Sequence record: KT919973.1
Strand: one strand, 5' to 3'
Length of the DNA: 64,000 nucleotides
Shown here: positions 26,184 to 34,015 of the stretch, piece by piece
Layout of the letters: the number at the start of each line of letters is the position of its first letter
Numbering within the stretch: position 1 is the stretch's first letter
The notes under the pieces: generated by a model
Database searches by the model: none
What the model was told of the DNA's origin: nothing
What the model saw: the letters and a program-made list of their open reading frames with translations, nothing else
Made by a program: the position numbers and the translations under genes

Positions 26184-27281
26184 TTATAGACTATGCAAAT
26201 ATTTGTAGGCTATATTAACACGTTCATCTGTTAGAGCTTCGCCGTATGCTGGACCCGGTTCAACGTCAACTTTGACATTTCGAGTCAAGTCGATTATTTC
26301 AGTGATTACATTTCGTTTAACTTCATCTGTTATCTGGGAAAGTGCAACTTGAAATGGTAGATGTCCTTTGTATGCGCCTATTTTCTCAAGAATTAAAATG
26401 ATTGTTTCATCGAATACACTTGCATATTCCAGCTCCATTAGCATCTGAGATGCCTTTCTGAATTGCTTAGTTTCACCGAAGTATGAGCCGAAACGTTGGC
26501 GGCGGTTTAACGCAGCCCATTTTGCCATCAACTGAACATCTTCACAGTGAAACGCCATTCGTCTGAAGTGTCGAAGCGATTGAAGCTCATGTACAGTTGG
26601 TCTCGGTGAGAACCCAACCTGACTTAGAAACACAAAGTACATGTGCGCGTCTTTCTCTGATAGTGCTTTTTGAGTCTCTAACCAAACACGTTCTTTCGGT
26701 AGATTGTCAAGCATACCGTTATTGATCATTTTCTTGCATAGCTCAATCGTTTCTTCTGCGACTGTAAATCCCATGCTGTAGTATCGAGCATAGAAACGAG
26801 CGACGCGCAGAACACGTAACGGGTCTTCGGCAAACGCTTCAGTTGTATGACGAAGAATCTTGTTCTTCAAGTCATCTAGACCGCCGTACGGGTCAATGAC
26901 ATCATCAGTCGAACCAAACATAAACAGACTATTTGGCGTCATGTCAGGTATAGCCATTGAGTTGATAGTCAGATCTCGTCGTGATAAGTCATCTTCTAAC
27001 GTGACACCTTCAGTTGTGAAAGTGAAGTCAGTGGTTTTACCGCCAGTGCTACGCTCTACACGAGCAAGCGCGACTTCATTGTTGTCTTTATCGAGCCAAA
27101 CAGGGAAATCAACGCCGATTGGTTCACCGTACATAGACATCATTTGTTCGTGTGTACAACCCGTGACGACGTAATCAATATCTTTCGGGAAGCTAGACCA
27201 ACCATCTACGTGCTTCAGTATGGAGTCGCGTACTGCACCCCCGACAATGTATTTTTGCATCAAGTTCATTTTCGCTTTCAT
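26184..27281 (-). CDS. cca: tRNA nucleotidyltransferase (CCA-adding enzyme, class II)
   Basis: YIVGGAVRDSIL, DIDYVV, DLSRRDLTINSMA, FAEDPLRVLRVARF, LPKERVWLE; ATG 27281 has GGAG SD. Confidence 0.92.
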   Translation of the reverse strand: MKAKMNLMQKYIVGGAVRDSILKHVDGWSSFPKDIDYVVTGCTHEQMMSMYGEPIGVDFPVWLDKDNNEVALARVERSTGGKTTDFTFTTEGVTLEDDLSRRDLTINSMAIPDMTPNSLFMFGSTDDVIDPYGGLDDLKNKILRHTTEAFAEDPLRVLRVARFYARYYSMGFTVAEETIELCKKMINNGMLDNLPKERVWLETQKALSEKDAHMYFVFLSQVGFSPRPTVHELQSLRHFRRMAFHCEDVQLMAKWAALNRRQRFGSYFGETKQFRKASQMLMELEYASVFDETIILILEKIGAYKGHLPFQVALSQITDEVKRNVITEIIDLTRNVKVDVEPGPAYGEALTDERVNIAYKYLHSL

Positions 27282-27305
27282 TTTTATTCTCCAATGTGAA
27301 CCTAT

Positions 27306-27351
27306 ACTGTACAAGACTAAATAATATAAGTCAACCTGTCTAAATATAAAC
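27306..27351. promoter_or_regulatory. Back-to-back promoters: sigma70-type leftward for cca, late-type rightward for inh
   Basis: Minus strand TTGACT-N17-TACAGT (27334..27306) and GTTTAT-N17-TATATT (27351..27323); plus strand ACTAAATA 27316-23 and TCTAAATA 27339-46. Confidence 0.55.
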
Positions 27352-27376: not shown

Positions 27377-27874
27377 ATGAGTCAATTGAAAAAACACGCA
27401 GAGTCGTTAACTAAAGAAAAACTAGACGAGTTTGCAAAAGAATATTACGGCATCGAACTTGACCGTCGTAAATCAAAAGGCGCAATGGCTAAGAAGCTTG
27501 TAGAAGAAGCTGAAGGTAAAACGCCATTGAAACAACTACCATGGGAAGAACTTCTTGTAGAGACGAAAGATGAAACCAAAGAAATTAAAGAAATTTCTGA
27601 AGTGAAAACTGAAGTCGTTGATAAAGTAGAACTACCAATCGATGAATCATTTGAACCAATGCCATTGCCATTCCGTCGTGGTCGTGAATTTTTCATGACT
27701 GCTTCTGATAGCGCGGTTACATCTGCGGAAGCTATTATCGCAGGGGATGGTTCGCTTGATGATGTACTTGCATCAGATCTTCGCGTAGTTAAATCAATCT
27801 TGCATTATGTCGAGAAAGACGGCAAGGTGCTAGTGCGTGAAACTCGCAATAGTCAATTCATCACAATTAAATAG
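27377..27874 (+). CDS. inh: Inhibitor of prohead protease Inh
   Basis: C-terminus ILHYVEKDGKVLVRETRNSQFITIK matches T4 Inh C-terminus by recall; LDEFAKEYYGIEL N-terminus. Confidence 0.85.
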   Translation: MSQLKKHAESLTKEKLDEFAKEYYGIELDRRKSKGAMAKKLVEEAEGKTPLKQLPWEELLVETKDETKEIKEISEVKTEVVDKVELPIDESFEPMPLPFRRGREFFMTASDSAVTSAEAIIAGDGSLDDVLASDLRVVKSILHYVEKDGKVLVRETRNSQFITIK

Positions 27875-28277: not shown

Positions 28278-29450
28278 CTAAGCGACGAACGCTACACGCT
28301 GTACGATTGTCTGTTTTTCGTCGCGAAACTCTTCGTGCGCTTTTACAGTCGCTTTTACAGTTACTGAAACGCCTTTCTCAATCGCTTCGCCGTCGTTATC
28401 ACGTAGACGCTTTGAACCAAACCACACGATTAGATTGTTTTGTTCATCGCGAAACTTGTGAATGAACGTGTCACCGTAGTAGCCTTCAGAAACGATAACC
28501 GCTTCAAGAGTGACATTAAAGTTCTCGCGTTTTTTGATAGTACCGACGTACTCAGATTCTGGCAAATCTGCTTCGCGTTTAGCTAGAATCACGCGCTCTT
28601 TTGCTTTGTTGAAAGCTAAGATAGCCGCTGCAATGTAACCAGTTTGTTTGTACTCGATGAATGGTGCAGAACAAGACGCGATGACGTTATGCATGAAATC
28701 GTTAGTCGCTTCTTGAGTTGCAACCCATTCTAAAATCTCTTTTGCTTGCTCTTCACAATTGTCGTAATCATATTCATCTAACATTGCATCGCGTTCGGTA
28801 CGAAGTGCAGGTGTACCTGCATTAATCATGTCAAGAACCCATTGACGAGTCACACCGCCACCGTGATAACAACCTTTGTGTTCAACATACATAGCAGCCC
28901 AAGCAAGAATCTGAAGCGCGTTATATGAAATTTTACGAGAACCACCACCCCAAGACTCTTCATCACCGAAATCAGCGATTGCAGTGTAGAACGTCGCTAG
29001 TGAGTCGATAGATTTAGTCGGCAAGTAGTATTTCAAGCATGAACCACCGACGCGCATTTCTTCTTTAGTCTCTTCATTCTGAATGACGTAAGTTACATTG
29101 CGTTGACGATTAGAGTTACAGTGATCGCATGTTGTGTCGCCTAGAAGATGACGGTGATTTGTTTCGTTGTTTGAACGAATAAGATTTGTCGCGTGGTCAA
29201 GTTGAGTCAAGAAAGACCAACCTTTAGTTGACGGGTATTCACCGAGAATAGTAACATCAACGTAGTATTCACGATGCTTTTGGTGATTGATAATAATGAC
29301 TTTTGAGTACACTTCACCGAACTCAAATGTAATTTCAGCAACACCGAGACGTTTTGCAATCTTGTTAGTAGATGCAATACGCGCTTCAAACTCGCTCATG
29401 TAGATTGATTTGATTGTGTAAGTGTTTTCGAATTTGTTTAGTGAAGTCAT
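28278..29450 (-). CDS. Hypothetical protein with Cys cluster (CDHC...C) and C-terminal OB-fold-like region
   Basis: 390 aa; own early-type promoter; C-terminal YVG..K.R...WFGS...ATVKAHEEF..EKQT pattern. Confidence 0.6.
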   Translation of the reverse strand: MTSLNKFENTYTIKSIYMSEFEARIASTNKIAKRLGVAEITFEFGEVYSKVIIINHQKHREYYVDVTILGEYPSTKGWSFLTQLDHATNLIRSNNETNHRHLLGDTTCDHCNSNRQRNVTYVIQNEETKEEMRVGGSCLKYYLPTKSIDSLATFYTAIADFGDEESWGGGSRKISYNALQILAWAAMYVEHKGCYHGGGVTRQWVLDMINAGTPALRTERDAMLDEYDYDNCEEQAKEILEWVATQEATNDFMHNVIASCSAPFIEYKQTGYIAAAILAFNKAKERVILAKREADLPESEYVGTIKKRENFNVTLEAVIVSEGYYGDTFIHKFRDEQNNLIVWFGSKRLRDNDGEAIEKGVSVTVKATVKAHEEFRDEKQTIVQRVAFVA

Positions 29451-29521: not shown

Positions 29522-29615
29522 CCAATAGATACAAAAAAAGCGCAAAAATGCGCTTTTTAATTATCAAGCAGGTACGAAATCTGCTGAATTCATGAAAATC
29601 TTGAAATGTTTTCAT
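29496..29615 (-). pseudogene. Stub ORF: capsid-targeting-like leader with no evident payload
   Basis: GAGAG SD then MKTFQDFHE (T4 IP leader MKTYQEFIAE-like); the remaining 30 codons run through a terminator and the next promoter. Confidence 0.55.
29533..29558 (-). terminator. Terminator ending the 31139-29623 late operon
   Basis: AAAAAGCGCA-TTTT-TGCGCTTTTTTT on the minus strand. Confidence 0.75.
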
Positions 29616-29622
29616 TGCTCTC

Positions 29623-30543
29623 TTATTTTCTAATGAAATATGTTTTAGTCGAGACTTTCCCTTCGACCGTTTTATATGTGTAATTCGGTAATGTATCAGC
29701 ATATCGTTTTACTAAACGATTGTATAGTTTTATTCTCGAATCACTGTCGTTTTTTATATCTCGCTCTGCACTGAAATAAATTGTTTCTGGCTCTCGCTCG
29801 TCTATAAATTCACGCATACCGCTCATTACTGTCGCAAACACACCATACATATTGCCTCGACCTGTTGCGCTGTAAGTATAATCACCCGAACTGTTCATAC
29901 CTAAGAACACAAGTTCCCATGCATCGTTTTGTTCTTGATACTGTATTGCAATCGCGTATTCGTCCCCGTTTACCGTGAACGTACCACCCCAACTGTGAAT
30001 TCTCTTCTCAACCCAGTGTATTTTAGATGGTCGGTCAAATGCCTCAGTCAAGTTAACTGAAGATAACCATTCACGCCATGTCTTCTTATTACCGATCTTG
30101 GCAAATGGGATATCGTCATGATCTAGCCACTGAGCCGAGCGGTCATATGACTGAGAAGTATCAAACCCTCTATAATCATCACCAACCCACAACCATTTGT
30201 GATGCCATATTTGGTTTACTTGACGTGGTTTGGAAACAACACCGTCTCTATAAGTAATCATCATACCCGCGGCTGGTTCTTGTACAGTATCAAATTCAAC
30301 TGAATCGTAGAAGGCAACTCCACCTTTCTTGTAGTCAATTCGTACTACATTCGGAGTAAATTGTGGGTTTGCAATTGATACTTGAGTACGAGCATCAGCA
30401 ACCATTTGCTTGAACTCATCTGGTATATAGTCAATGTGAACATATAATGAACCGCCAATGTCTTTACCCACGCCCCACTTGCTGCGTTTTACTGCACTAC
30501 CTTTTCGAGTTTTCAATGTAGCGCGTTCAAAAATTATGCTCAT
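29623..30543 (-). CDS. Two-domain putative internal head protein; N-domain resembles the accessory domain of phosphorothioation-associated methyltransferases
   Basis: Late operon; MSIIFE leader and internal NLTE/A site; motif order VGK...LYVH / NVVRI / F...P / IWHHK / IG.K..W..L. Confidence 0.5.
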   Translation of the reverse strand: MSIIFERATLKTRKGSAVKRSKWGVGKDIGGSLYVHIDYIPDEFKQMVADARTQVSIANPQFTPNVVRIDYKKGGVAFYDSVEFDTVQEPAAGMMITYRDGVVSKPRQVNQIWHHKWLWVGDDYRGFDTSQSYDRSAQWLDHDDIPFAKIGNKKTWREWLSSVNLTEAFDRPSKIHWVEKRIHSWGGTFTVNGDEYAIAIQYQEQNDAWELVFLGMNSSGDYTYSATGRGNMYGVFATVMSGMREFIDEREPETIYFSAERDIKNDSDSRIKLYNRLVKRYADTLPNYTYKTVEGKVSTKTYFIRK

Positions 30544-30545
30544 TA

Positions 30546-31139
30546 TTACCTCGTTGCTGCGTTTGTAATATTGCGAATCATACGAATTGCGTATTCAGTA
30601 TCGCCAGTCATAGCCGATGACGCTGCTTTATCGACGTAAAATGTGCTATCTTCAATCATGTTCAAGTGATGGTAAATCTCACGAAAATCATGACGGTCGT
30701 ATTCTTTCACATTAAAACGAAACGCACCTGCCTTCTTATCTTCGTCATGAACACGCTTGTATTCATCTACGACACGAATCATTTCGGTTGCGTATTTCTT
30801 CATTTCCATGTTATCAAGCTTTAAACGCTTTGCAGCTTTCATTACTTCGTCACGAGGACGTTCAAGCTCGATTACGTCTTTAAGAACATTCAGACTGTGA
30901 ATTGTGTTCACTGCTGCACGCTCCATTCTTAGCTTATGGTCTTCTAGTGACTTATTGTGCTTTCTAAGTTCACCCGATGCTGTCGCACTCGCGATCAAAC
31001 CTGCAAACACACCCCAGAAGCCACCTTTGCGCTGCATACGCTTTTTAACTTCACCTTTCGAACCCGATGTTGCTGCTTTAAATTGAGCCCATCTACCGGT
31101 TTGTTTAGCTTTGTCCATTTCTGTTAAAAATTCTATCAT
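30546..31139 (-). CDS. Putative internal head protein (helical, one hydrophobic segment)
   Basis: First gene after late promoter; N-terminus MIEFLTE resembles the EFIAE capsid-targeting signal; GGFWGVFAGLIA segment. Confidence 0.55.
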   Translation of the reverse strand: MIEFLTEMDKAKQTGRWAQFKAATSGSKGEVKKRMQRKGGFWGVFAGLIASATASGELRKHNKSLEDHKLRMERAAVNTIHSLNVLKDVIELERPRDEVMKAAKRLKLDNMEMKKYATEMIRVVDEYKRVHDEDKKAGAFRFNVKEYDRHDFREIYHHLNMIEDSTFYVDKAASSAMTGDTEYAIRMIRNITNAATR

Positions 31140-31161
31140 TGTTAACCCCTTTGTTTACTAT

Positions 31162-31169
31162 TATTTAGA
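31162..31169 (-). promoter_or_regulatory. Late promoter variant
   Basis: TCTAAATA on the minus strand, 22 nt before the ATG at 31139, right after a terminator. Confidence 0.7.
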
Positions 31170-31177
31170 CGCAAACG

Positions 31178-31205
31178 AAAAAAGGGCGACCGAAGTCACC
31201 CTTTT
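31178..31205 (-). terminator. Rho-independent terminator
   Basis: AAAAGGGTGAC-TTCG-GTCGCCCTTTTTT on the minus strand. Confidence 0.88.
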
Positions 31206-32684: not shown

Positions 32685-33197
32685 TTACCTCAGATAAATG
32701 AAGCTGTTCGAAAGACGGTCGTGAACTAAAAGATGACCATTTCGCTTAACCCAATATTCAATCGTCTTCAATTCGTGAGAGTCGCGTCGACCTATATTCC
32801 AATCATGAATCACATCATGCGCAACTGGCTGATATAGCTCATCACCACGGCGATAAGTAGGCATCCATTTAGGCTTGAATTCGTCCTTGATTACTAATGT
32901 TACGTTTTCATCACCTAAAGGGGCATTAGCAGAAACACCTTCTAATTCTTTCTTAACGTCGTCTGAAAGCTCTTTGACTACAATCGCGTCCGATTCATCG
33001 ACTGATTCACAGCGCGTCTCAGACTCGATTACAGAGCATTCTAGTGGTAGTTCTTTAACCTCGCGTAGCTCGTGTGTGAATAACTCGTCGATCATCTTGC
33101 TTTTAGTCAGCGATTTATCAAGTTCGATGTCGTAGTACTCTTTTGCAAATTCTGCAACTACGCGCTTGGTTTGTTTCTTTAGATATTCTTTAATCAT
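32685..33197 (-). CDS. Inh paralogue
   Basis: EFAKEYYDIELDK shared with inh (EFAKEYYGIELDR); C-terminus IEYWVKRNGHLLVHDRLSNSFIYLR aligns with inh C-terminus. Confidence 0.75.
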   Translation of the reverse strand: MIKEYLKKQTKRVVAEFAKEYYDIELDKSLTKSKMIDELFTHELREVKELPLECSVIESETRCESVDESDAIVVKELSDDVKKELEGVSANAPLGDENVTLVIKDEFKPKWMPTYRRGDELYQPVAHDVIHDWNIGRRDSHELKTIEYWVKRNGHLLVHDRLSNSFIYLR

Positions 33198-33429: not shown

Positions 33430-33455
33430 TATAAATACAGTTATACATATTTAGA
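33430..33455. promoter_or_regulatory. Divergent late promoters
   Basis: TATAAATA (+) 33430-37 and TCTAAATA (-) 33455-48. Confidence 0.75.
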
Positions 33456-33478: not shown

Positions 33479-34015
33479 ATGAGACATTTTGTGTATGAAA
33501 TACGACATACAAAAACAAATCGAATATACGTCGGTATACACTCATGTGATTGTGAATTCTTAGATACAAATTATTTCGGTTCTGGGATACATATCAAAAA
33601 TGCAATACGCAAGCATGGGAAGAGTGAATTCACTAGACGTGTGATAGCAGAATTTGACAACCGAGAAGACGCAGCAAATTTAGAGGCTGAGATCGTCACG
33701 CGAGAGTTTTGTGAACGTGATGATAGTTACAACATCAGAACTGGTGGCGATACGTGTTTTGAACATAGCAGCAAAACACGTGAGGTGATGTCCAAATCAC
33801 AATCAGGTGATAAGAATCACTTCTACGGGAAGACACACACTGCCGAAGCAAAGAATAAAATAGGCAAAAAGAATTCGATTAAATTAAAAGGGCGCGAGTT
33901 AGAAGCAAATAAATTGACCGCAACATGCCCACATTGTAATAAAACCGCACAACTCGCCAATATGAAGCGTTGGCATTTTGATAACTGCAAACACAGAGAA
34001 ATTAATGATGAGTGA
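33479..34015 (+). mobile_element. Free-standing Seg-type GIY-YIG homing endonuclease
   Basis: FVYEI...IYVGIH, YFGSG, E and YNI.TGG catalytic motifs; NUMOD3-like repeats; CPHC...RWHFDNC tail; same position as T4 segE, before uvsW. Confidence 0.88.

What the first reader, a model, noticed from the sequence alone, without database searches (positions are those of the whole stretch)
29623..30543. Phage protein resembling the accessory domain of DNA-phosphorothioation-associated methyltransferases
The first 160 aa or so show, in order, VGKDIGGSLYVH, PNVVRID, YDSVEFDTVQEPA, QIWHHKWLWVGDDY and KIGNKKTWREWL. From memory this follows the non-catalytic repeated domain of the dnd-associated putative methyltransferase family (TIGR04096-type: VGKxLPxAxYxH, WNxIKL, YPxFxxxxxP, PILHRKE, IGxxxxW). 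No SAM-binding motif is present. A possible protease site (NLTE/A) separates it from a second domain (TGRGNMYGVFATV...SRIKLYNRL) that I recall from other T4-like phage proteins. Dnd systems occur in vibrios, so a stand-alone injected copy could be a decoy or inhibitor of phosphorothioate-based defence. The homology is recalled, not computed.
Basis: inference. Interest (0 to 1): 0.75.

Follow-up and report, generated by a model that had tools for sequence, protein, structure and literature searches.

The report
Orphan methyltransferase-partner domain fused to GNAT fold
This Vibrio phage gene joins a strongly conserved, uncharacterised domain (normally the partner of a methyltransferase in phosphorothioate-linked bacterial loci and in giant phage proteins) to an acetyltransferase-like domain, so it looks like a working enzyme module, not a passive decoy, and its target is still unknown.

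Summary
The ORF (29623-30543, minus strand, 306 aa; phiST2_0234 of Vibrio phage phi-ST2) and all quoted motifs are real. The recalled homology holds at domain level: 12 of 16 relatives of residues 1-165 hit TIGR04096 (best E 1.2e-10) on profile positions ~319-465, its non-methyltransferase end. The window protein alone gives no hit and is not a family member.

The domain is widespread (1,165 representative clusters) with no Pfam model and no PDB fold match. K27, H36, E89, H114, H115 and K116 are 98-100 % conserved, which suggests an active or ligand-binding pocket. A Methyltransf_23-type methyltransferase lies within 300 aa in 86 of 133 multidomain proteins, including 29 of 30 giant phage proteins. 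Rarer partners are CCA-adding enzymes, Tpt1/PARP-like, NTase and NFACT-R domains.

Cellular copies (mostly Planctomycetota) often neighbour sulfur-binding-domain and SauUSI-like helicase genes, so a phosphorothioate link exists there. No such link appears in the phage.

Residues 165-306 (DUF6934-like) have a GNAT-like fold, occur in two paralogs, and were swapped between phi-ST2 and KVP40 (24 % versus 97 % identity).

I read the protein as a nucleic-acid-directed module coupled to a transferase. The decoy idea is possible but unsupported.

The parts
29623..30543 (-). Whole ORF, 306 aa plus stop (phiST2_0234, PHROG 16075, annotated hypothetical)
30052..30543 (-). N-terminal domain, residues 1-164: homolog of the C-terminal region of TIGR04096. 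Near-invariant residues are G26 K27 Y34 H36 E89 P90 H114 H115 K116 Y124 F127. AlphaFold model pLDDT 90.5, with no PDB fold match.
30028..30051 (-). Linker and start motif of the second domain (residues 165-172; pattern L-x-E-A/S-F/L-D-x-P). It is conserved in solo paralogs, in PA5oct gp135 and in both repeats of P0025.
29626..30051 (-). C-terminal domain, residues 165-306: DUF6934-like (24.2 bits, below the cut-off of 27) with a GNAT-like fold. The T-G-x-G loop precedes the long helix, and R270, L273 and Y274 (R-x-x-L-Y) are invariant.
30546..31139 (-). Upstream 197-aa ORF, separated from the finding ORF by 2 nt. It is conserved at this position in KVP40 and in phage 1.081.O, has no detectable family, and is probably co-transcribed.
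31130..31157 (-). Sigma70-like promoter match (9 of 12, with TG before the -10) in front of the two-gene unit. A one-mismatch late-promoter-like octamer lies at 31162-31169.
31180..31205 (-). Terminator-like stem-loop upstream of the unit
29535..29558 (-). Terminator-like stem-loop 65 nt downstream of the ORF
26184..27314 (-). CCA-adding tRNA nucleotidyltransferase gene, three genes away on the same strand. The same enzyme type is fused to the N-domain in P0077 and P0117, and lies 1.8-4.2 kb from N-domain genes in other phage lineages.

Best explanation
The gene encodes a two-module enzyme-like protein. Shown: the N-terminal module belongs to a large, uncatalogued domain family. This family forms the C-terminal part of TIGR04096-type 'DNA phosphorothioation-associated putative methyltransferases'. 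In most multidomain proteins it sits directly beside a Methyltransf_23-type SAM methyltransferase. Shown: in KVP40-like vibriophages the methyltransferase is absent, and the domain is fused to a GNAT-fold (acyltransferase-like) DUF6934 module. That module was exchanged by recombination at the linker. Inferred: the N-domain is the substrate-engaging part. Its pocket of invariant Lys/His/Glu/His-His-Lys plus aromatic residues would bind, and perhaps chemically process, a constant feature of a nucleic acid, either the backbone or an end. The attached or neighbouring transferase would supply the group-transfer chemistry: methyl, nucleotidyl, ADP-ribosyl/phospho, or here possibly acyl. Inferred: in the phage it acts during host takeover or counter-defence. 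It is probably expressed from a sigma70-like promoter as a two-gene unit with the upstream 197-aa ORF. It would act as an enzyme rather than as a passive mimic. Whether the target is DNA (as the cellular phosphorothioate/restriction neighbourhoods suggest) or tRNA/RNA 3' ends (as the phage CCA-enzyme links suggest) is not resolved.
For: TIGR04096 hits on 12 of 16 relatives, profile positions 319-465. The family has 1,165 representative clusters, 201 at E<=1e-30. Polar and aromatic residues are 97-100 % conserved over 201 instances. The AlphaFold model is confident (pLDDT 90.5) and has no PDB match. A methyltransferase lies within 300 aa in 86 of 133 multidomain members and in 29 of 30 giants, with gaps of -6 to 68 aa where measured. 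Split methyltransferase and domain gene pairs occur in phage contigs, a Photobacterium plasmid and planctomycete genomes. Other transferase partners are full CCA-adding enzymes, Tpt1/PARP-like and NFACT-R domains, NTP_transf_2, and weak GNAT hits in P0107. For the C-domain, all top 50 PDB fold matches are GNATs. The module swap is shown by 97 % versus 24 % identity to KVP40. The domain stands alone at the same genomic position in phage 1.081.O.
Against: No biochemical activity is known for any family member. The GNAT match rests on a moderate model (pLDDT 78.6, TM 0.35-0.51). The acetyl-CoA loop motif is absent from the KVP40-type versions and from the two paralogs, so the C-domain may be non-catalytic. 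High residue conservation is also compatible with a pure binding pocket. The promoter call is a weak consensus match (9 of 12), and a near-consensus late-promoter octamer is also present. The partner census comes from the best 150 of 1,165 hits plus motif-anchored scans, so it is biased toward close relatives.
Confidence: 0.45

Rival explanations
1. One reading: a stand-alone copy of the accessory domain that acts as a decoy or inhibitor of phosphorothioate-based defence (Dnd, Ssp or sulfur-binding type IV enzymes) in Vibrio hosts. It would bind the same DNA feature or the same partner protein as the cellular methyltransferase-domain protein.
For: Domain homology to TIGR04096. In cellular genomes the domain gene recurs next to sulfur-binding-domain-like genes (9 loci; PDB 8h0l E 9e-5, 7cc9/7ccj E 3e-4) and SauUSI-like SF2 helicase genes (17 loci; 7clg E 1e-51). 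The phage copy has lost the methyltransferase. Relatives occur on Vibrio megaplasmids. Large relatives sit in proteins likely delivered with the DNA.
Against: A decoy would not need the whole polar pocket, yet it is fully retained. No dnd, ssp or sulfur-binding genes lie near any phage or plasmid copy examined. The N-domain model does not match solved sulfur-binding domains or anything else in the PDB. PADLOC has no model covering the domain. The one characterised phage antagonist of Dnd is an unrelated kinase. Helicase neighbours may be partly generic.
Confidence: 0.17
2. A tRNA/RNA 3'-end factor that works with the neighbouring CCA-adding enzyme. The N-domain would bind or heal damaged RNA 3' ends so that they can be rebuilt or modified, as part of the phage's RNA-repair set against host anticodon or acceptor-end nucleases.
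For: The window's CCA-adding enzyme gene is three genes away. The same enzyme type (PolyA_pol head, RNA-binding, HD) is fused to the domain in P0077 and P0117. It lies 1.8-4.2 kb from domain genes in schizoT4 phages, in the T4-like contig L003 and in the L084-L089 lineage. Other partners act on RNA ends or bind tRNA: Tpt1/KptA-like, NFACT-R and minimal NTase domains. The phage also encodes Pnk and RNA ligase A. A His/His/Lys set resembles metal-independent phosphotransfer sites (my own knowledge of such enzymes, not tested here).
Against: These partners are rare: 2-3 proteins each, against 86 with the methyltransferase. The cellular context points to DNA restriction. Gene proximity in T4-like phages may reflect shared hyperplastic regions. 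There are no tRNA genes in the window. Rfam was not searched.
Confidence: 0.22
3. A capsid-internal protein processed by the prohead protease at (L/I)-x-E sites (near the N-terminus and at the L-T-E linker) and delivered with the DNA, like the T4 internal proteins or Alt.
For: (L/I)-x-E occurs at residues 4-6 and 165-167. The upstream ORF and the solo paralog also start with such a motif. The gene lies beside the head-gene cluster and between two inh-like genes. PA5oct gp135, a solo C-domain homolog (phmmer E 2.6e-10), is flagged as a virion protein by ESI-MS/MS. P0107 lies at the ejected-core-protein position of a podovirus.
Against: The motif is found within the first 12 residues of 28 % of gene proxies in the window, against about 14 % expected, so it is not specific. 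The L-x-E at the linker is a conserved family motif also found outside T4-like phages. There is no exact late promoter on this strand. The orientation is opposite to the late genes, and a sigma70-like promoter lies upstream. I found no virion proteome for KVP40-like phages.
Confidence: 0.1

Closest known systems
TIGR04096 (dnd_rel_methyl), DNA phosphorothioation-associated putative methyltransferase
   Same: The N-domain family matches the last ~145 positions of this 478-position model (E down to 1.2e-10 for solo domains and 6e-13 for methyltransferase fusions). Cellular relatives pair the domain with the same methyltransferase type and sit near phosphorothioate-reader genes.
   Different: The window protein has no methyltransferase part and gives no hit of its own. 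Relatives score 15-48 bits against a cut-off of 150. There is no dnd context in the phage. A GNAT-like domain is attached instead.
Large polyvalent proteins of phages and conjugative elements (Iyer et al. 2017, PMC5512222), including the DarB-type LPD36-methylase-helicase unit
   Same: The domain lies with its methyltransferase in the middle of 3,000-6,451-aa phage proteins that carry LPD38 and helicase domains, next to lysis or virion genes. Solo versions in phages are also described for polyvalent-protein domains.
   Different: This dyad uses a Methyltransf_23-type methyltransferase, not the EcoKI/TaqI-like adenine methylase. The domain is not among the Pfam LPD or PBECR models that matched, and the paper does not describe it. 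The window protein is small and has two domains.
DUF6934 (PF22028) and the GNAT acyltransferase superfamily
   Same: The C-domain hits DUF6934 (24.2 bits; relative P0025 41 bits). Its model matches only GNAT structures in the PDB.
   Different: The window protein scores below the Pfam cut-off. The N-terminal helices of the canonical GNAT fold are not evident. The cofactor loop is not conserved across the family. No activity is known.
Pseudomonas phage PA5oct gp135 (YP_010679079.1)
   Same: A 141-aa solo homolog of the C-domain (tblastn E 1e-4, phmmer E 2.6e-10) with the same start motif and T-G-x-G loop.
   Different: It has no N-domain, comes from a jumbo phage of another family, and is annotated as virion-associated by mass spectrometry, which has not been shown for the phi-ST2 protein.
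JSS1_004, the characterised phage antagonist of DndBCDE-FGH (PMC12345140)
   Different: It consists of a protein kinase plus a shutoff domain and has no similarity to this ORF.

Membership tests
TIGR04096 dnd_rel_methyl | Whole-protein HMM score at or above the curated cut-off (150 bits) | tested here: not met
   The window protein gives no hit at E<=10. Relatives score 14.8-48.3 bits.
TIGR04096 dnd_rel_methyl | N-terminal SAM-dependent methyltransferase region (profile positions ~44-153 and onward) | tested here: not met
   No methyltransferase hit in Pfam or NCBIfam. The methyltransferase profile finds nothing in the window.
TIGR04096 dnd_rel_methyl | C-terminal domain (profile positions ~319-465) | tested here: met
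   Met by transitivity: 12 of 16 members of alignment A1 hit this region, best E 1.2e-10. The window domain is 36-71 % identical to those members.
TIGR04096 dnd_rel_methyl | Neighbourhood of DNA phosphorothioation or restriction genes | tested here: not met
   No sulfur-binding-like ORF in the window. No dnd genes are annotated in the 164 kb of phi-ST2 examined. The feature is met for some cellular relatives.
DUF6934 (PF22028) | Score at or above the gathering threshold (27 bits) | tested here: inconclusive
   24.2 bits, E 3.7e-5, residues 197-286. Homolog P0025 scores 41 bits.
GNAT acyltransferase superfamily | GNAT core fold | tested here: met
   All top 50 Foldseek PDB matches are GNATs, probability 0.95-1.0, about 130 of 142 residues aligned. 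The model is of moderate quality, pLDDT 78.6.
GNAT acyltransferase superfamily | Conserved acyl-CoA pyrophosphate-binding loop and catalytic residues | tested here: inconclusive
   A T-G-x-G loop is present in the phi-ST2 type, P0025, P0027 and PA5oct gp135 but absent in the KVP40 type and both paralogs. R-x-x-L-Y is invariant.
Polyvalent proteins (Iyer et al. 2017) | Two or more domains of disparate activity in one polypeptide | tested here: met
   Two unrelated modules. Giant relatives carry LPD38 and helicase domains.
Polyvalent proteins (Iyer et al. 2017) | Packaged in the virion and delivered with the DNA | not testable with these tools
   Only context is available: early-like promoter signals for this ORF and virion-adjacent positions for large relatives.
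T4-type capsid internal proteins | N-terminal targeting leader ending in an (L/I)-x-E protease site, with late expression | tested here: inconclusive
   The motif is present, but so it is in 20 of 72 gene proxies. There is no exact late promoter, only a one-mismatch octamer.
Sulfur-binding domain (phosphorothioate reader) | Fold or sequence match of the N-domain to solved sulfur-binding domains | tested here: not met
   No PDB fold match (best E 0.83) and no PDB sequence match.

The most novel reading that the evidence does not exclude
The N-domain is an enzyme or reader specific for a constant chemical feature of the nucleic-acid backbone, with phosphorothioate as the obvious candidate given the sulfur-binding-domain neighbours. 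Together with its methyltransferase it would form a backbone-editing dyad. Bacteria would use this dyad in self/non-self marking, and phages would carry it in delivered giant proteins.
Probability: 0.1. Interest if true: 0.85.

Novelty: new variant of a known kind. Interest (0 to 1): 0.55.

Why it matters
The N-domain is one of the better-conserved domains without a name. It has over a thousand sequence clusters, an apparently new fold, a pocket of invariant His/Lys/Glu residues, and a near-obligate partnership with one methyltransferase family. It forms the core of giant phage proteins of 3,000-6,400 aa and appears in bacterial loci that also hold phosphorothioate readers and type IV-like restriction helicases. 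Defining what it binds or catalyses would explain a recurrent unit of phage polyvalent proteins and a neglected component of phosphorothioate-associated systems. The phi-ST2/KVP40 gene is a convenient small natural form in which the domain is separated from the methyltransferase. For genome annotation, two 'hypothetical' modules gain usable labels: TIGR04096 C-terminal-type domain and GNAT-like DUF6934.

Tried and rejected
- Single-sequence scans of the ORF (NCBIfam, Pfam, PDB sequences) gave nothing for the N-domain. Only scanning its relatives exposed TIGR04096.
- PDB fold search of the N-domain found no match. The viral fold library gave one unnamed long protein.
- PADLOC has no model for the domain.
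- PDB sequence search with the partner methyltransferase profile found nothing.
- A word-based search with the C-domain alone failed.
- A search for proteins named as dnd-associated methyltransferases found none by that name, whether with the MTase+domain alignment in the protein database or by tblastn against plasmids. I therefore could not align a certified TIGR04096 member or inspect its dnd context.
- The partner methyltransferase was not found in the window or in GenBank phages by tblastn.
- I considered a PLD-type H-x-K site, a P-loop and a ligase-type lysine motif for the N-domain and rejected them, because spacing and predicted secondary structure do not fit and no fold match exists.
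- The (L/I)-x-E 'protease site' argument was tested and found non-specific.
- Literature searches for TIGR04096, DUF5662 and a KVP40 virion proteome gave nothing useful.
- Disclosure 1: in my private reasoning I twice recalled short stretches of known proteins from memory (a T4 internal-protein leader and a PLD-nuclease motif example).
That profile was never used.

Full report
**1. The observation**

The window is part of Vibrio phage phi-ST2, a KVP40-like member of Schizotequatrovirus (100 % identity). It is annotated as hypothetical (phiST2_0234) and forms PHROG 16075 of unknown function. Full-length homologs occur in 49 phage records.

**2. Two modules**

BLASTP against the retrieved homologs shows that residues 1-165 and 165-296 are independent units.
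- The first unit occurs alone as proteins of 160-190 aa in many phages and metagenomes.
- The second unit occurs alone, in tandem (P0025), or in front of other sequence.
- In phage 1.081.O, at the same genomic position, the first unit stands alone as 170 aa.
- Between phi-ST2 and KVP40 the first unit is 97 % identical and the second only 24 %. The second module was therefore exchanged at the linker.

**3. The recalled homology is real at domain level**

The window protein alone gives no NCBIfam hit, even at E<=10. When the 16 members of the N-domain alignment A1 were scanned one by one, 12 hit TIGR04096 and nothing else of note.
- The matches cover profile positions ~319-465 of 478, with best E 1.2e-10.
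- Fusion proteins that also carry a methyltransferase match the methyltransferase part of the same model as well (P0084, positions 44-153; P0108, E 6.4e-13).
- All scores (15-48 bits) are far below the curated cut-off of 150.

This is shared-domain homology, not family membership.

**4. What the N-domain looks like**

- Alignment A1 shows invariant G-x-G-K, Y-x-H, F-D-x3-E-P and I-W-H-H-K-W segments.
- Over 201 domain instances, K27, H36, E89, P90, H114, H115, K116, Y124 and F127 are 98-100 % conserved.
- The AlphaFold model is confident (pLDDT 90.5, pTM 0.85).
- It matches nothing in the PDB (best E 0.83) and only one unnamed long protein in the viral library.
- No Pfam, PADLOC or PDB-sequence model covers it.

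Such conservation of polar residues fits a catalytic or ligand-binding pocket. It argues against a degenerate 'non-catalytic' accessory or decoy.

**5. Distribution and partners**

A profile search of 1.84 billion representative proteins found 1,165 clusters, 201 of them at E<=1e-30. The hits are solo proteins, mid-size fusions, and 30 giants of 2,500-6,451 aa.

The giants are phage 'polyvalent proteins' in the sense of PMC5512222.
- P0050 has helicase and LPD38 domains and lies beside holin and amidase genes.
- P0045 ends the late block of a temperate phage.
- P0132 has LPD38.
- P0107 follows a T7 gp14-like gene, which is the position of the ejected core proteins.

The dominant partner is a Methyltransf_23-type methyltransferase.
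- Iterative profiles find it within 300 aa of the domain in 86 of 133 multidomain proteins and in 29 of 30 giants.
- Where measured in the large proteins, the gap is -6 to 68 aa.
- Split versions, with adjacent methyltransferase and domain genes, occur in phage contigs L010/L011, a Photobacterium plasmid and planctomycete genomes.

Rarer partners are:
- complete CCA-adding enzymes (P0077, P0117);
- a Tpt1/KptA-PARP-like region (P0063), NFACT-R (P0034) and DUF5662 (P0038);
- NTP_transf_2;
- ParB_N plus a methyltransferase (P0100).

The polyvalent-protein paper does not describe this dyad.

**6. Cellular context and phosphorothioate**

The genome scan returned 59 loci, by my count of the record titles about 49 of them from Planctomycetota. 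Architectures are either a solo domain gene beside a 485-605-aa methyltransferase gene, or fused proteins of 660-822 aa. The fused proteins carry a weak partial second copy of the domain.

Recurrent neighbours are:
- an SF2 helicase in 17 loci, whose best solved relative is SauUSI, a type IV ATP-dependent restriction enzyme (7clg, E 1e-51);
- a ~300-aa protein in 9 loci matching solved sulfur-binding domains, which read phosphorothioate DNA (8h0l E 9e-5; 7cc9/7ccj E 3e-4). It is directly adjacent to the domain gene in several loci.

Of the 27 loci with at least 13 kb of sequence, 16 have one or the other. The 'phosphorothioation-associated' label therefore has substance for cellular members.

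This context was not seen elsewhere:
- the Vibrio megaplasmid copies;
- two other cellular loci, L012 and L013;
- any phage locus, or the window itself.

**7. The CCA link**

The window's CCA-adding enzyme gene (26184-27314) lies three genes from the ORF on the same strand.
- The same enzyme type is fused to the domain twice.
- It lies 1.8-4.2 kb from domain genes in schizoT4 phages, in contig L003 and in the L084-L089 lineage.
- The phage also encodes Pnk and RNA ligase A.

This keeps an RNA 3'-end reading alive. The numbers are small, however, and shared gene order could explain part of the pattern.

**8. The C-domain**

- It hits DUF6934 just below threshold and PHROGs 6387 and 27801.
- Phi-ST2 has two paralogs in adjacent genes: phiST2_0360 (a 149-aa solo copy) and phiST2_0361 (306 aa, with the domain at its N-terminus).
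- The AlphaFold model (pLDDT 78.6) matches only GNAT acyltransferases among its top 50 PDB hits.
- A T-G-x-G loop sits where GNATs bind the cofactor pyrophosphate, but it is missing in the KVP40-type versions and the paralogs. R-x-x-L-Y is invariant.
- PA5oct gp135 is flagged as virion-associated by mass spectrometry.

**9. Expression and delivery**

- The ORF follows a 197-aa ORF with a 2-nt gap. The unit is bracketed by stem-loop terminators and preceded by a sigma70-like promoter match.
- No exact TATAAATA lies on this strand. A one-mismatch variant lies 23 nt upstream of the 197-aa ORF.
- The unit is oriented opposite to the late head genes.
- (L/I)-x-E motifs near the N-termini are not discriminating.

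Delivery with the DNA is therefore not supported for this protein, although it is plausible for the large relatives.

**10. Verdict**

The protein is best read as the substrate-engaging, enzyme-like half of a widespread methyltransferase dyad, uncoupled from its methyltransferase and re-coupled to a GNAT-like module. Its target is still open between DNA backbone features and RNA ends. The anti-phosphorothioate decoy idea is neither excluded nor specifically supported.
Noticed in passing
window 32685-33197 (-) and 27377-27874 (+): The ORF at 32685-33197 (phiST2_0239, annotated hypothetical) is a full-length paralog of the annotated Inh, the inhibitor of the prohead protease (28 % identity, E 1e-13). 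The block of unknown genes that contains the finding is therefore flanked by two inh-like genes in opposite orientation.
   Followed up: partly
window 33479-34015 (+), with TATAAATA at 33430-33437 (+): A 178-aa ORF with a GIY-YIG-like start and a repeated basic motif looks like a Seg-type homing endonuclease. It is preceded by an exact late-promoter octamer and lies between the unknown-gene block and the uvsW-like helicase gene.
   Followed up: no
window 28278-29450 (-): A 390-aa ORF directly downstream of the finding has its own sigma70-like promoter match (29521-29493). It is conserved in KVP40 (KVP40.0369) and in phage 1.081.O, contains a Cys-x2-Cys stretch, and has no Pfam or PDB sequence match.
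   Followed up: partly
L015 46886-48264 (phi-ST2 record 234886-236264): Two adjacent paralogs of the C-domain: phiST2_0360 (149 aa, solo) and phiST2_0361 (306 aa, domain plus about 150 further residues of unknown nature). Both begin with a short leader that ends in the same L-x-E-A/S-F/L-D-x-P motif.
   Followed up: partly
L010 3923-7099 and L011 2873-6049: In an uncultured phage the gene string runs DUF5662, then an OGG_N/HhH-GPD glycosylase-like gene, then a Methyltransf_23 gene, then a solo N-domain gene. DUF5662 is also fused to the N-domain in P0038. This hints at a larger nucleic-acid modification cassette.
   Followed up: no
L012 7083-9724 (Myxococcales MAG): A radical-SAM-like gene and a class V aminotransferase (cysteine-desulfurase-type) gene lie divergently next to a methyltransferase+domain gene. 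This could be sulfur chemistry, but there is no recognisable dnd cluster.
   Followed up: no
L084-L089 (IMG/VR contigs): Six near-identical viral contigs, one labelled as a giant-virus bin, encode a 574-aa protein with the N-domain at residues 179-339, 1.8 kb from a 347-aa CCA-enzyme-like gene. The flanking regions of that protein are unidentified.
   Followed up: no
L021 3501-4463 (KVP40.0371): The KVP40 ortholog carries an old annotation note, 'match to PFAM PF05480'. That note is not reproduced by the current Pfam scan of the KVP40-type protein P0003 and looks spurious.
   Followed up: partly
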